DNA from: Lama guanicoe
Lineage: Eukaryota
Assembly: GCA_013239625.1 (NCBI GenBank)
Contig: MU056262.1
Location: 8,594,134-8,658,133 of the forward strand
Direction of reading: 5' to 3'
Length of the DNA: 64,000 nucleotides
This document shows positions 28,575 through 45,125 of the stretch, piece after piece. The notes under the pieces were generated by a model, which did not search any database, had not been told where the DNA came from, and saw nothing but the letters and a program-made list of their open reading frames with translations. How positions within the stretch are numbered: the stretch's first letter is position 1; each line of letters starts with the position of its first letter. The translations under genes were made by a program, and so were the position numbers.

Positions 28575-31500
28575 CAGTGAAGCTGTTCAAGGGCCACAGC
28601 TGCTGCTACTGTGGTAGCCACAAAGGGTGGCGGGTGGAGAAGCACAGACACCCTGACCAGCAGATACTGCAGCAGAAATAAAGCCTGCTTGGCTGTTGGA
28701 TATGTGTCAAGCCAGCTCTGAACCCTGCAGGCCACACTTGCCTTCAAATATAGCTGGCGTAGAAGACAGGGGAATCAGACCAGGGCCGCAGCTTAGGGCC
28801 ACAAATCTGGGCAGCTACAGTTGAGGGGTGGGTGTTCTGAAAGAGTAGGGACAGGCTGGCCCTCTTACCCTTCCCCAAGATGAGTCCTCATCTTTCCTCA
28901 GTGCTAGCCCTGCAGTCTGGTGGCACCAGCCAAAGTGGGTCTGGGGCTGCCAGTGTCTCCCTATTGCCCTTGGGATAATGGTCATGGTACCAAGATTAAA
29001 CAGAGTTGAGATGGGTTGCAGACATGTTGTGGTTTAGCCCTTCCAACAGAGTGCCTGTGGCTTGCAGGGTTCTCAGTGCTTGGTCCAAGCTGGCATCCTC
29101 CCTCCCAAGAGGCTGGGACCACCCCTACCCCCAGTGCCAGCTCTGGCCTGTCCACACGCACTTCCCTGGTCCCTTCTGCTTCATTGTCCCCTTCCTTTCC
29201 TCCACTTTTTAAACTCACCTGAGTCTTCCTTGACCTCCTAAGCTAAGTTCATTGCTCCCCTGGGTTCCTAGTCCCAGGAGCTTGTTTATTTGTGCACACC
29301 CTACACACTGCACTGGCCCTGCCTGTTGGCTAATATGCTTCCCCAACTGGCCTTAGGGCTGGGAGAGCTTCAGCAGCTCTGACTCCCCACATAAAGCACA
29401 GTGCCTGCAGGTACTCAGGCAGCCCAGTTAGCTGTCCTAGAACTAGTGAACTGATAGATGAACAAAGCATGGGTGGATGCATGGGAGACAGACTGTTTCT
29501 CAGAGCTGTTTGAGAAGTCACCAGCACTGTTCAGGAGAATGGACTAGATGTCCTCTAATGACTCTTTATACCCAGAGATGCTGGCCTCTTGTTCTTTTCC
29601 AGAGGACAGCCTCACTGACTCAGGCATCCTTAGTCACCATGCTCTTGGGGTCTGGCTGGGACAAGTGCACACAGATGTGCCTTTGCTACAGGCCATGTCC
29701 TGGGGCTCGTGCTGGGGAAAGGCCTCTGGAGTCTCTGGGGAAGAAGCTAAGACCCACTGAGGGCACCTGCAGGGCTTTGGGCCAGAAGAAGAAGTTGTCT
29801 GTCCCTCTGGTGTTTCCTACACATTGTCTGTGGGCTGGGCTGGGCTGTTTCAACTGAGGTGGGGAGGGGAGGGACCCTAGAGTCTGAGAACTTCAAACAA
29901 GGAGGTAAGATCTGGAATTTTTTAATCTTGTTGGGCGTACAACAAAGACTGCTAAAGCTCAGTGCTGGCAGGGGGCTGGGAGAGCTCCTGTAGGGAACAA
30001 GGTGGCGCGCGCGAGCTCCTGTAGGGAATAAGGTGGGCACAGGCCTTAGTGTGAGAAGTGGACAGGGCAAGAGGCAGAAGGTCTGCTCCTCCCCAGCCCA
30101 CCTGTAACCCTGGCCTCTGAACCCAGCCCTGGACAGGAGAGCAGGAGCTGCCATTTCCAGGGGTCTGTGACCGTGACATGTAGCTGGAAAACGTCCCTGC
30201 TGGGTTGTGGGGCAGAGTAGGGCAGGAAGCCCCTTGGGCTGCCCTGGATGAGTCCCACCCCTAGTCCTAGAAAAGGAGAAGGGGCTCTGGGGCATGTAGC
30301 AGAAGGAGACAGAAGGCACTGAGTCAAACTCTAGGTCAAGAAGCCAGGGCTGAGGACTCTGGAGTTGACGGAGGCTGAGCTGCAGGGCTGGTTACTGACC
30401 TGGCCTCAGAGTGTTAGGGTCAGGTCAGCACCCCCCACGAAGCGGGACTGGACACAGGTCACCTGGGGCAGTTGGGCTTGGAAGCACCTGACAGAAGCCA
30501 TGCTGATGCCAGGACACATGGCCACATCTAACGTCTGGAGTTGCTTGCACGCTTGCCCAGTGGTATCCAGTGTTCTGCAGGGAGGCCACTAGATGAGTGC
30601 CCAACTCAGCATCGGCCCCAGCCAAACCCCTGTACTGTGGCAACACCGGACACACTCACTGCTCTGTAAGCCGACTGCAGCTGGACAGGTTGAGATGCTG
30701 CAGCCTCGGCCAGGAGCTGGCTGCCTGGGCCCAGCCCTTGTCGTTGAGGAGGCTGCAGTGACTCAGCGCCAAGCGCTCCAGGCTGGGACAACCCCTGGCC
30801 ACAGCCACCAAGCCCTTGTCTGTAAGTGCGGGCAACAGGCTCAGTGACAACTGCTTCAGCTGGGGGAACTGGAGCACCTGTAAGGATGGGGGTGGGGTGG
30901 AGGGTAATGTGTACTGGAGCCCAGGTCTAGGGCCCTTCCAACTTCCTCTGCCCCCAGACAAAGGAATGGCCAAAGCAGCAGAAGCCCATAAGAAAGGAAG
31001 TTTTTCCAAGCAAAAAGTGGGTTGGCCCAGACCCCTGGCTCCAGCCCCCAGCCCCACACCTTGGTCAAACTGGCATCAGTCAGCTTACTGCAGGCTGTGA
31101 GGTCCAACTCCCGCAGGGCCTGCAGCGTGAGCAGGGAGGGGTCCTGTGGCTGGGGAGAAGGGTTCTTGGGGCTGGAGGCCTGATGCTCCAGCTCTCGGTG
31201 TGGCTGTGGGAAGAAGCCCCTGCCTCAGGTTCCTCCTGAGTTTGACCCTCAAATGTTCCCAGAGAGAGACTTAGGAGGGGTAGGAGGGCAGAGAACGCCC
31301 CACCCACCTGACCTCCAGGGTCCCTCACCTGGGCTCTTTCAAAGCCTCCTCACTTGGTTCCCTCAGCCCCAGAAACCCCCAGTCATGGAGCTCCTTGCAC
31401 CAGGCCAGACACAGGACTGAGAGGTGGGTAAGATAGGTGCAGATGGCTTGCATGGTTTGGTCGGTGAGGGCCACACAGGAGGATAAGTCTAGCACCCTAA

Positions 31501-32895
31501 GGCTTGGGCTCAGCACGGGGATCAGGGAGAACACTGAGGCGTCCTAGGAGGGAAGTGTAAAAGGGAGAGGGCAGTGGAGAGGTGTGCCTGTGTCACCAGG
31601 CTTGGCAGGGATCACTAGTAGGGTTCTGCCCAAGGTTCCAGCCCCACAGACAATAGGGAGCTACCACAGGGTCCTTCGAAGGAAGCAACAATGTTCTGGT
31701 GCTGGTGAAAGTCAGTGTAGATGGATGAGGTGGGTTCTAGAGATGCAGCACCAGGAGAAGGACAAATTGGCTGGGGCAGGAAGGATGCAGGTGAAAATTT
31801 CTGTGGTATTCACCTTGCCTATGCTCCCAGCACCAGTGGCGGACATCTGATCCTAGCTGAGCCAGTCAGACATGCTCCTGCTAGAACTGTGAGGTCACAG
31901 ACCAGGTAGGGCTGCCACCTGCCAGGAGCAACTGGGGTTAGGTAGGGGGAGCAGGAATTAAGCACAGAATAGAGGAAGCTGGTTTGTAGTGAGATGCAGA
32001 GACATGAGAATGTGGGGCCCCAGAGAGAGCAGCTAAGAGACACACAGCAGTGAAGATGGAATAGGACAGGGGAAGAGAGGCGCCTGTGGGGAAAAAGGCT
32101 GAGATGGTTTTCAGGTTAGGAATGCCCTGGCCACAGTGCTAGACTGAAGGAATAATCAGCTAACGAGGGAGAGACTGACATTGCCAAGATAGGGACACCA
32201 CCCAGAGGGGCAGGGCTGAGCCCTACTGAAGAAACTGGCTTCAGCCAAGAAATGACCCTTCTGCTCCCACATCACATTCCCTCCCTCGGACCCTGCCAGA
32301 GCAACCACTTCGGTGGAACCTCAGTGCCCCTTCCCCGCAGGACTGGGTTCTGTCACCCCTTCTACCAGCCTTCCCGGCTTCCAGAACACCTGCCCCCAGA
32401 GCTGCTCCAAAGACTGCAGTGGTCACTAAGCACTTGGCTTGTGAGGTGTGTGCCACCTTGGGGGCTGGACCACCCTGATCTCTTGGACCTCCCTCTACCT
32501 GGACCCACTGTTGGGGCTGCAGGGAGGAGTGTTGGTGGCAGCACTGTCTATCTAGGCTCCTTTCCGCTTCCAGACTATGTCCCCAGTTCAGTTCTACTAC
32601 TACCACTTGGACATGAACACTGGGCACCTCCCTGATGCCACATTCCCAGTCACCCCAGCCCTTAGCCCTGGTGGGGAAGGAACGAAGGGGATGGGATGCT
32701 CACCTTGAGTGAGGAGCAGTAGGCCAGGCTGAGGGAGGCCAATGGGGGTGGAGCTCCATGCACCGAGCCCAGCGCCTGGGCCAGTTCCCACCCTCTCACC
32801 TGGCAGCACTCGGCCATGTTGAGGCTCTGCAGCTCCTGCAGGCCCCCTAGGGCTGAGCATCCCGCATCTGTGACCCGCTGCAGCTTCCTCAGGCT

Positions 32896-32944
32896 CAGGT
32901 GCTGCAGGTGCTGCAGGTGCTGCAGGTGCTGCAGGTGCTGCAGG
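32896..32944 (+). repeat. Perfect (CAGGTGCTG)5 tandem repeat in LRRC29 exon 3
   Basis: Five exact 9-mers plus CAGG; encodes (QHL)5 on the minus strand. Confidence 0.95.
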
Positions 32945-44149: not shown

Positions 44150-44950
44150 AAGTGGGGAGGCCTTTCTAGAGGACCAGAACAGGCAGTGATGAGGATGGAG
44201 CGGCCATCCTATGAACCGCATCCCAAAGAGCTATTGGAGATATGACTGGTCATCTCTGAGATCTATGAGGATGGAACAGATATCCTCTGGGACCAAAGAG
44301 GGAAAGGATGCCATTGCAGGGGGTTCACCCAGGTGGCAGCAGTGCTGTTTTTGCTAAAGGGAAGGAGCACCATTCCAAGAGCCAATAGGGAAAGGGTGAC
44401 CTGTCTCCCATGGGCAGTGGGAGAGGGCTGCCAACTCTGGGCAAAAGGGATGGAGAGGCCATCTCAAAAGGCCACTGGGGACAAAACCTGTTATCTCTCT
44501 CTGGCCAATGGTGGCAGAGTGGTCTTGCCCCAGGCTAAGGAGAGGGAGCAAGCACCCCATGGGAGATAAGGTGGTAGACCCCATCATCAGGGGCCAAGGG
44601 AATGAAGAGCAGGCTTGTCTTTGGTGAAGGAACCCAGAGATCATGCCTGGAGTTGATGGGAGGGGGCTGTCTCCCACCGCCAGGGGAGGGGGCAGCCTCT
44701 CTCGGGGAAGGAATGGAACGACCATCCCAAGGGGCCAGTAGGGGTAAGATCGGTTACCCTGCGGAGATGATGGGATGGAGCGGACATCTTCCAGAACTGA
44801 GGGGGAGGGGCGGCCATCTCAAGAGAAGGGGGCTAGGCAGAGGCCCTGTTCTCGCTGAGGTGACAGAGCAGCCATCTCTTGGGGCCAATGGGGAAGGAGA
44901 GGATGGTCCCCCAAGCTAAGGGGATGGAGTGGCCCAAAAGTGGGGCCATT
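44150..44950. repeat. Highly degenerate minisatellite (~27-30 bp unit, ggccaa-ggggatggagcggccatctc-like)
   Basis: ggatggag(c/a)ggccatc and ggccaatgggga motifs recur through the stretch (e.g. ~44193, 44447, 44711, 44773, 44868, 44921). Confidence 0.6.
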
Positions 44951-45125
44951 ACCCATAGCCTGCAGGTCCTGGGGTCTCCCGGGCGGGTGGTTTCCGCCAG
45001 ATGGGCGAGGCCGGGCGAGCTGTCTGGCAGCCCCTCCCCACAGCCCGGGACCCCGAGGTTGGGCCTGTCCCGAGCTAGGCCTGAGGGCGACCTCCTCTCA
45101 CCTCCAGGGGCAGCGACTCCGCCAT

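What the first reader, a model, noticed from the sequence alone, without database searches (positions are those of the whole stretch)
30406..45125. LRRC29/FBXL9 is a multiply inactivated unitary pseudogene, possibly lost independently of the human loss
Seen: all 7 exons and GT-AG sites are intact, but the frame carries a TAG at codon 205 (33241-33239), a 4-nt insertion (~32974-32977), a TGA (32949-32947, probably CGA>TGA) and a 1-nt deficit at the end of exon 4. Several distinct lesions make a single sequencing error unlikely. Recalled: mouse Lrrc29 is an intact F-box/LRR protein of about 620 aa, while the human locus is annotated as truncated/pseudogene (FBXL9P). Inference: recurrent loss of an SCF substrate receptor in different mammalian lineages.
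Basis: partly seen in the sequence, partly recalled or inferred. Interest (0 to 1): 0.75.

Follow-up and report, generated by a model that had tools for sequence, protein, structure and literature searches.

The report
Camelid FBXL9 gene with broken exons
An alpaca-type genome keeps the F-box gene LRRC29/FBXL9 in its usual place, but four frame-breaking mutations in its two largest exons rule out the long protein of most mammals; this is ordinary lineage-specific gene decay, and whether a short form survives is still open.

Summary
On the minus strand there are seven coding exons with GT-AG sites. There is a TAG at 33241-33239, a 4-nt insertion at 32977-32974, a TGA at 32949-32947, and a 1-nt deficit at the end of the fourth exon (215 nt against 216). 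There is also an unreported in-frame 27-nt expansion of a 9-nt repeat.

Orthologous proteins read through every site: Q in 51 of 54, no extra residue in 44 of 44, R in 72 of 79.

The locus lies between CARD, Sec6 and formin neighbours. It matches public alpaca proteins letter for letter.

The assembly gap lies in intron 2 inside a TA repeat and touches no frame.

All lesions lie in exons 3 and 4. Other mammals have annotated isoforms that skip these exons. The exon 1-2-5-6-7 frame (218-aa type, as in rat) is intact and well conserved here. So loss of the long receptor is well supported, but complete gene death is not shown.

The human truncation is at a different site, so the two losses are independent.

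No paper on this loss was found. This is a new member of a known kind, of modest interest.

The parts
45102..45125 (-). E1 coding part: ATG plus 7 codons, donor GT at 45101-45100
   Evidence: identical to the start of public alpaca protein P0023
41897..41998 (-). E2: 34 codons, F-box core, phase 0 to 0
   Evidence: Pfam F-box 21.9 bits (cut-off 20.5) and F-box-like 22.6 bits; 75 orthologous proteins aligned, mean identity 88.9%
32704..33727 (-). E3: large LRR exon, 1024 nt (3n+1). Other mammals also use inner acceptors at 33673 (531-aa type) and 33025 (315-aa type)
   Evidence: the Cervus model places 12 LRR strands in this exon
33239..33241 (-). In-frame TAG
   Evidence: orthologues have Q in 51 of 54 spanning proteins, R in 2, D in 1; it maps to a low-confidence loop, residue 205 of the Cervus model
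32974..32977 (-). 4-nt insertion causing a +1 frameshift; the old frame stops at TGA 32974-32972
   Evidence: 44 of 44 spanning proteins have no residue here
32947..32949 (-). TGA in the resumed LRR frame
   Evidence: R in 72 of 79 spanning proteins, C in 4, L in 2, W in 1
32896..32944 (-). 9-nt tandem repeat, 5.4 copies, in frame; adds 9 residues to one LRR
   Evidence: this stretch is 10 residues in 77 of 79 proteins, 7 in 2, and 19 in the window
31329..31543 (-). E4: 215 nt (3n+2); one base missing at its 3' end (C run 31333-31331), so E4-to-E5 reads out of frame and stops inside E5
   Evidence: among the 35 aligned proteins, the non-primate mammals that join E4 to E5 have a 72nd codon, usually Q, before E5
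31060..31203 (-). E5: 48 codons, phase 0 to 0, intact; a disordered linker followed by the first C-terminal LRR
   Evidence: 81 proteins aligned, mean identity 76.6%; identical in P0097
31087..31088 (-). Cryptic GT donor inside E5, used by the public alpaca model P0023; it puts E6 and E7 out of frame
   Evidence: P0023 follows E5 up to this point and then matches the out-of-frame ORF 30606-30791
30660..30877 (-). E6: 218 nt, intact, 72 codons plus 2 nt
   Evidence: 112 proteins aligned, mean identity 86.5%; identical in P0097
30481..30574 (-). E7, the part that I read: 31 codons, intact.
   Evidence: public alpaca protein P0097 continues to a C-terminus of normal length

Best explanation
This is the single, syntenic orthologue of the SCF substrate-receptor gene LRRC29/FBXL9 in an alpaca-type camelid. 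Its promoter-side exons, splice sites and transcription are kept.

Shown: exons 3 and 4 encode about 12 of the 18 leucine-rich repeats. They have collected two premature stops, a 4-nt insertion, a 1-nt deletion and a 27-nt repeat expansion. Every isoform that contains E3, its 3' part, or E4 now ends prematurely. That covers the roughly 621, 549/531, 315 and 282-aa types seen in other mammals.

Inferred: the stops lie far upstream of the last exon junction, so these transcripts should be targets of nonsense-mediated decay. The long receptor is therefore lost. The locus is most likely a fairly young, still transcribed unitary pseudogene, and its remaining 657 nt of coding exons have simply not been hit yet.

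Shown at protein level: the loss is independent of the human truncation.
For: - Lesions are read directly in the sequence.
- Orthologues are open at each site: Q in 51/54, no residue in 44/44, R in 72/79, and a 72-codon E4.
- 44 proteins of 500-550 aa from other mammals and turtles show that the long ORF is the usual state.
- The only camelid entries are the 280-aa model P0023 and the 228-aa model P0097. P0023 runs out of frame after a cryptic donor in E5. P0097 is patterned on the human 223-aa ORF. That is 1 of 29 proteins and 1 of 120 listed.
- Neighbours carry CARD, Sec6 and formin GBD domains.
- 14 of 24 listed runs, all DNA by record, hold at least 0.96 of the 416 sampled words of 30400-34400. 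They come from four coded organisms and six studies. Six RNA or probable-RNA runs hold 0.26-0.32.
- The window has 11 unique residues among 216 otherwise conserved sites in E3/E4.
- Lrrc29 was the only F-box orthogroup in Euarchontoglires whose omega was not significantly below 1 (PMC3984280, passages read).
Against:
- All lesions are confined to E3 and E4.
- E1, E2, E5, E6 and the read part of E7 are open, with all splice sites. Only 2 of 135 conserved sites carry unique changes, which is at the low end of the 21 lineages compared.
- E2 joins E5 in frame, as in the annotated rat P0013 (218 aa) and hamster P0026 (210 aa) proteins.
- The window's unique-change rate in E3/E4 (5.1%) is not above that of other isolated lineages (5-7%). 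No clear relaxation is therefore visible.
Confidence: 0.55

Rival explanations
1. Isoform pruning rather than gene death. The long isoforms are lost, but a short protein of the 218-aa type is still made and used. It would hold the F-box, a flexible linker and six C-terminal LRRs, encoded by E1-E2-E5-E6-E7. It could act as a reduced SCF adaptor or as a SKP1-binding competitor.
For: - The E2 to E5 junction is phase 0 to phase 0, and all five exons are open with GT-AG sites.
- Rat and hamster have annotated proteins with exactly this exon set.
- The alpaca model P0023 itself joins E2 to E5.
- Unique changes at conserved sites are 2/135 in these exons against 11/216 in E3/E4.
- In the AlphaFold2 model of rat P0013, the C-terminal LRR block folds with block-mean pLDDT of 79-95 without E3.
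- RNA runs hold part of the stretch.
Against: - The long-versus-short contrast is not significant (Fisher p = 0.14).
- The chance that 4 or 5 events all fall in E3/E4 is 0.18 or 0.12.
- P0023 uses a cryptic donor inside E5 that destroys the frame.
- No in-frame 218-aa camelid protein appeared in two searches whose length windows included it.
- In the short form the F-box hangs on a disordered linker (pLDDT below 50 at residues 50-62). In the long form it is joined directly to the repeats.
Confidence: 0.3
2. Assembly or consensus errors, or variants private to the sequenced animal. Under this reading the species has an intact gene.
For: - No reads could be laid.
- The E4 deficit lies in a short C run, a typical place for a consensus error.
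- An assembly gap shows that the region is not perfectly resolved.
Against: - Two of the lesions are substitutions and one is a 4-nt insertion outside any homopolymer.
- 14 runs from four coded organisms and six studies hold 0.96-0.99 of the sampled 31-letter words across all four lesions. Two of these runs are not flagged as a possible source.
- My inference: a run lacking all the lesions would miss roughly a dozen of the 416 words.
- No long camelid protein is on record, whereas 44 long ones exist for other mammals and turtles.
Confidence: 0.08

Closest known systems
Human LRRC29, alias FBXL9P (public proteins P0002 of 180 aa, P0111 of 223 aa, P0122 of 312 aa)
   Same: It is the same orthologous gene, truncated compared with other primates. 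Orangutan P0037 has 531 aa and bonobo P0080 reads through the whole of E3. The alias FBXL9P is used in print (10.1101/2023.02.13.528235, one passage read).
   Different: The lesions differ. P0002 ends six codons upstream of the camelid TAG, at a codon that is R here. P0111 starts in another frame of E3 and switches into the LRR frame at a point where the window's LRR frame is continuous. I did not examine human DNA.
Intact mammalian LRRC29, for example Cervus elaphus isoform X3 (P0030, 549 aa) and Bos javanicus P0033 (485 aa, includes E4)
   Same: Same exon structure. Window pieces are 76-89% identical on average to orthologous proteins. The nearest artiodactyl relatives on hand (deer, cattle, pig, whale) are open at every lesion site.
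   Different: The window has two stops, two frameshifts and a 9-residue repeat expansion in E3/E4.
FBXL2 and FBXL17, solved F-box/LRR receptors (PDB 6o60_C, 8uah_B)
   Same: An F-box followed by cysteine-containing LRRs. phmmer of the Cervus orthologue gives E = 2.5e-31 for FBXL2 and 9.5e-23 for FBXL17.
   Different: They are paralogues, not orthologues. LRRC29 has about 18 repeats broken by two low-confidence loops. No substrate is known to me, and none appeared in the listings I saw.

Membership tests
F-box/LRR-repeat (FBXL) proteins | N-terminal F-box of about 40 residues | tested here: met
   E2 piece: Pfam PF00646 at 21.9 bits (cut-off 20.5) and PF12937 at 22.6 bits (cut-off 24.3)
F-box/LRR-repeat (FBXL) proteins | Array of cysteine-containing leucine-rich repeats after the F-box | tested here: met
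   LRR_6, LRR_4 and LRR_1 matches on 5 of 6 LRR pieces, all below the gathering scores because the pieces are short. The Cervus orthologue matches FBXL2 at E = 2.5e-31, and its model shows 18 repeat strands
F-box/LRR-repeat (FBXL) proteins | One open frame joining the F-box to the repeat array | tested here: not met
   Not met for any isoform that holds E3 or E4. Met only for the E2-to-E5 junction
LRRC29/FBXL9 orthogroup | Closest relatives are proteins named LRRC29, with the same exon boundaries | tested here: met
   isoform boundaries coincide with the window's splice sites
LRRC29/FBXL9 orthogroup | Conserved neighbourhood | tested here: met
   CARD ORF at 932-1606, Sec6 ORF at 13380-14369, Formin_GBD_N ORF at 62687-63145. 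The expected gene order (NOL3, EXOC3L1 ... FHOD1) is recalled, not from a call. Fusion models named FHOD1 (P0096) and exocyst 3-like (P0089) in other species point the same way
Unitary pseudogene | Frame-disrupting lesions compared with intact orthologues, at the orthologous locus, with introns kept | tested here: met
   Four lesions; introns and synteny
Unitary pseudogene | Lesions are real and fixed in the species | tested here: inconclusive
The only evidence is indirect, from shares of sampled words in 14 runs
Unitary pseudogene | No coding isoform survives | tested here: not met
   The E1-E2-E5-E6-E7 frame is open. The same exon set is annotated in rat and hamster
Unitary pseudogene | Relaxed selection on the lineage | tested here: inconclusive
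   Protein-level proxy only: 11/216 against 2/135 unique changes, p = 0.14. No orthologous DNA was on hand for a dN/dS test
Unitary pseudogene | No second intact copy elsewhere in the genome | not testable with these tools
   Only this 64-kb window of the genome can be read

The most novel reading that the evidence does not exclude
South American camelids carry a natural 'isoform knock-out' of FBXL9. The 12-repeat N-terminal LRR block is dead. A minimal protein of F-box, linker and six LRRs is kept under selection. That would show that the C-terminal block is an independent functional module, and it would give a natural separation-of-function allele for a receptor whose substrates are unknown.
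Probability: 0.3. Interest if true: 0.5.

Novelty: new member of a known kind. Interest (0 to 1): 0.3.

Why it matters
LRRC29/FBXL9 is one of the least studied F-box receptors. Several observations suggest the gene is weakly constrained and prone to lineage-specific decay:
- a second, independent loss of its long form, in camelids as well as in human;
- hints of frame changes in a rhinoceros protein model;
- the near-neutral omega reported for Euarchontoglires.

This matters for annotation, because camelid gene sets carry only an out-of-frame model and a model patterned on the human ORF. It also matters for anyone using presence or absence of the gene to infer function. If the short isoform proves to be conserved, the case becomes a useful natural experiment on the modularity of LRR receptors. 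Otherwise it is a routine entry in a gene-loss catalogue.

Tried and rejected
No reads were seen.
- Full-length (about 621 aa) orthologues: out of reach. The protein search admits at most 1.75 times the query length, and my longest permitted query had 315 aa. The full length is inferred from overlapping deer and cattle proteins.
- Pfam on the first 162 residues of E3 gave no match.
- Alignment A1 placed the second E3 piece on the wrong repeat. I did not use it.
- Relative-rate proxy: not significant. Test of lesion distribution: not significant.
- A motif count over the 44 long proteins was too loose to use. I used only the count of 44.
- The 'LOW QUALITY PROTEIN' label of P0097 as evidence for the lesions: rejected. 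The model switches from another frame of E3 (ORF 32600-32860) into the LRR frame downstream of all three E3 lesions, just as the human 223-aa protein does. The flag therefore reflects the template, not these lesions.
- Processed or duplicated pseudogene: rejected, because introns and synteny are kept.
- A hidden exon in the assembly gap: rejected, because orthologues pass from E2 straight to E3.
- Literature: searches found no paper on LRRC29 loss in camelids. One search was badly designed: none of its 15 listed papers holds the gene name. The supplements of PMC3984280 (tables of F-box genes and pseudogenes by species) are closed and may bear on the primate and rodent status.
- Joined step: I did not search, fold or print any spliced model of the window's exons. 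Public proteins of deer (P0030) and rat (P0013) were folded as stand-ins.
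Full report
**What is in the sequence.**
The minus strand of 30406-45125 holds a seven-exon F-box/LRR gene (read; re-derived by script).
- E1: 45125-45102, an ATG plus 7 codons.
- E2: 41998-41897, 34 codons, with a Pfam F-box at 21.9 bits against a cut-off of 20.5.
- E3: 33727-32704, 1024 nt.
- E4: 31543-31329, 215 nt.
- E5: 31203-31060, 144 nt.
- E6: 30877-30660, 218 nt.
- E7: from 30574 downward.

All exons keep AG acceptors and GT donors.

- TAG at 33241-33239.
- Four extra bases at 32977-32974. 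After these the old frame stops at 32974-32972 and the LRR frame resumes at 32973.
- TGA at 32949-32947 in the resumed frame.
- An E4 of 71 codons plus 2 nt, which leaves E5 out of frame.

A fifth change was not reported. A 9-nt tandem repeat at 32896-32944 has 5.4 copies. It is in frame and adds 9 residues to one repeat.

**The assembly gap.**
The N run at 40518-40674 lies in intron 2, about 1.2 kb downstream of the E2 donor and 6.8 kb upstream of E3. TA and AT dinucleotide runs flank it (40447-40515 and 40675-40712). Orthologous proteins go straight from the end of E2 into E3, so no exon is missing and no reading frame crosses the gap. Whether the two sides are contiguous remains unknown. 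I fetched no cut across the gap.

**Identity, locus and species.**
Exon pieces were searched and aligned one by one. I did not search, fold or print any joined model of the window's exons.
- The pieces are on average 76-89% identical to 34-112 proteins, most of them named LRRC29.
- Flanking ORFs carry a CARD domain (932-1606), a Sec6 domain (13380-14369) and a formin GBD (62687-63145).
- This fits the NOL3 / EXOC3L1 ... FHOD1 neighbourhood. I recall that gene order for the human locus; it comes from no call.
- The window's E1, E2, E5, E6 and the read part of E7 occur letter for letter in two public Vicugna pacos proteins, P0023 and P0097. The genome is therefore alpaca or a very close relative.

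**Each lesion against orthologues (local pile-ups on 135 public proteins).**
- TAG site: Q in 51 of 54 spanning proteins, R in 2, D in 1.
- Insertion site: 44 of 44 proteins have nothing between the flanking residues.
- TGA site: R in 72 of 79, C in 4, L in 2, W in 1.
- Repeat stretch: 10 residues in 77 of 79 proteins and 7 in 2, against 19 in the window.
- E4: among the 35 aligned proteins, the non-primate mammals that join E4 to E5 have a 72nd codon, usually Q, before E5. The window lacks one base of a C run there.
- Deer, cattle, pig and whale proteins are open at all these sites.

**Which products are hit.**
Two searches revealed a family of annotated isoforms in other mammals:

| Isoform type | Exon set |
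|---|---|
| 549/550 aa and 531 aa | E1-E2-E3-E5-E6-E7, using one of two acceptors for E3 |
| about 621 aa | as above, with E4 |
| 315 aa | E3 entered at an inner acceptor near 33025, E4 skipped |
| 282 aa | E2-E4-E5-E6-E7 (polar bear) |
| 218/210 aa | E2-E5-E6-E7 (rat P0013, hamster P0026) |

Forty-four stored proteins have 500-550 aa.

In the window every form that holds E3, its 3' part or E4 ends prematurely. Only the E2-to-E5 junction (phase 0 to phase 0) leaves an open frame of the 218-aa type.

The alpaca model P0023 does join E2 to E5, but it leaves E5 at a cryptic GT (31088-31087) and then runs out of frame through E6 and E7.

P0097 ('LOW QUALITY PROTEIN', 228 aa) is patterned on the human 223-aa ORF. 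Its frame correction lies downstream of the three E3 lesions. The label therefore says nothing about them.

**Dead gene or pruned gene?**
- At sites at least 90% conserved in a 20-genus panel, the window has unique residues at 11 of 216 sites in E3/E4 and at 2 of 135 sites in E2, E5, E6 and E7.
- The first value lies within the range of other isolated lineages (mole 5.7%, rabbit 6.0%, sloth 5.1%, tenrec 7.2%). The second is at the low end.
- The contrast is not significant (Fisher p = 0.14).
- The chance that 4 or 5 events all fall in the 1239 nt of E3/E4 rather than the 657 nt of the other coding exons is 0.18 or 0.12.

Neither reading can be excluded. I give the complete, young pseudogene 0.55 and the surviving short isoform 0.30.

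**Structure.**
- The AlphaFold2 model of the deer orthologue (mean pLDDT 80.1, pTM 0.79) shows 18 repeat strands, 12 of them in E3 and 6 in E5-E7.
- It has low-confidence loops at residues 196-208 and 374-395. The first loop holds the Q that is TAG here (residue 205). The second is the start of E5.
- The insertion site (residue 293) and the TGA site (residue 301) fall in a repeat helix.
- In the model of the rat 218-aa protein (mean pLDDT 73.6) the C-terminal block folds with block-mean pLDDT of 79-95. The F-box, however, hangs on a disordered linker.
- A short form is therefore foldable, but it lacks the rigid F-box-to-repeat coupling of the long form.

**Are the lesions real?**
Indirect evidence:
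- 14 of 24 listed runs hold 0.96-0.99 of the 416 sampled words of 30400-34400. They come from four coded organisms and six studies, and two are not flagged as a possible source. By my estimate a run lacking all the lesions would miss about a dozen words.
- Six RNA or probable-RNA runs hold 0.26-0.32 of the words, so the locus is transcribed.
- No long camelid protein appears in the searches: 1 camelid entry of 29, and 1 of 120 listed out of 167.

**Independence from the human loss, and recurrence.**
- The human cDNA protein P0002 ends six codons before the camelid TAG, at a codon that is R here. Orangutan P0037 (531 aa) and bonobo P0080 read on.
- Artiodactyls, bats, carnivores, a mole, rodents, a rabbit, a sloth and a tenrec all have long ORFs. 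The two truncations are therefore independent.
- A black-rhinoceros model (P0004) passes through all three frames of E3. That is either further decay or an assembly error.
- PMC3984280 (passages read) reports Lrrc29 as the only F-box orthogroup of eight Euarchontoglires whose omega was not significantly below 1 (p = 0.107).

**Literature.**
Five searches found no paper on LRRC29 loss in camelids. The alias FBXL9P occurs in print (10.1101/2023.02.13.528235, one passage read). Supplements were closed.

**Verdict.**
- Loss of the long receptor, and its independence from the human case, are well supported.
- 'Pseudogene' in the full sense is probable but unproven.
- This is a new member of a known kind, of modest interest.

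Noticed in passing
window 32896-32944: The 9-nt unit behind the repeated three-residue motif varies in copy number among mammals. Most have two units (10-residue stretch in 77 of 79 proteins), two proteins including bonobo P0080 have one unit fewer, dolphin P0064 has one more, and the window has five. It is a small coding microsatellite inside an LRR.
   Followed up: partly
P0004 (Diceros bicornis minor) against window 33440-33570: The rhinoceros protein model follows all three reading frames of E3 in turn, and later another frame of the second E3 piece. This is either independent decay of the gene in rhinoceros or errors in that assembly.
   Followed up: partly
P0064, P0114, P0115 (cetaceans), the part matching window E5 31140-31203: In whale and dolphin models the linker part of E5 reads like a frame-shifted version of the usual sequence and then returns to the normal frame. 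This may be a pair of compensating indels in a disordered linker.
   Followed up: no
window 32790-32860, and P0097 / P0111 / P0093: The 223-228-aa 'LRRC29' models of human, pig and alpaca start at an ATG in another frame of E3 and then switch into the LRR frame. In alpaca the switch needs a correction, hence 'LOW QUALITY PROTEIN'. Similar 228-aa entries for panda (P0101) and Rousettus (P0095) were seen by name only.
   Followed up: partly
window 29747-30319, minus strand: An ORF downstream of the LRRC29 stop supplies the last 88 or so residues of the alpaca model P0023. This implies a read-through or extended transcript beyond the normal last exon.
   Followed up: no
window 932-1606 (+), 13380-14369 (-), 62687-63145 (-): Neighbouring ORFs carry CARD, Sec6 and formin GBD domains. 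The other 17 long ORFs scanned gave no Pfam match at E <= 0.001.
   Followed up: partly
I did not examine it.
   Followed up: no
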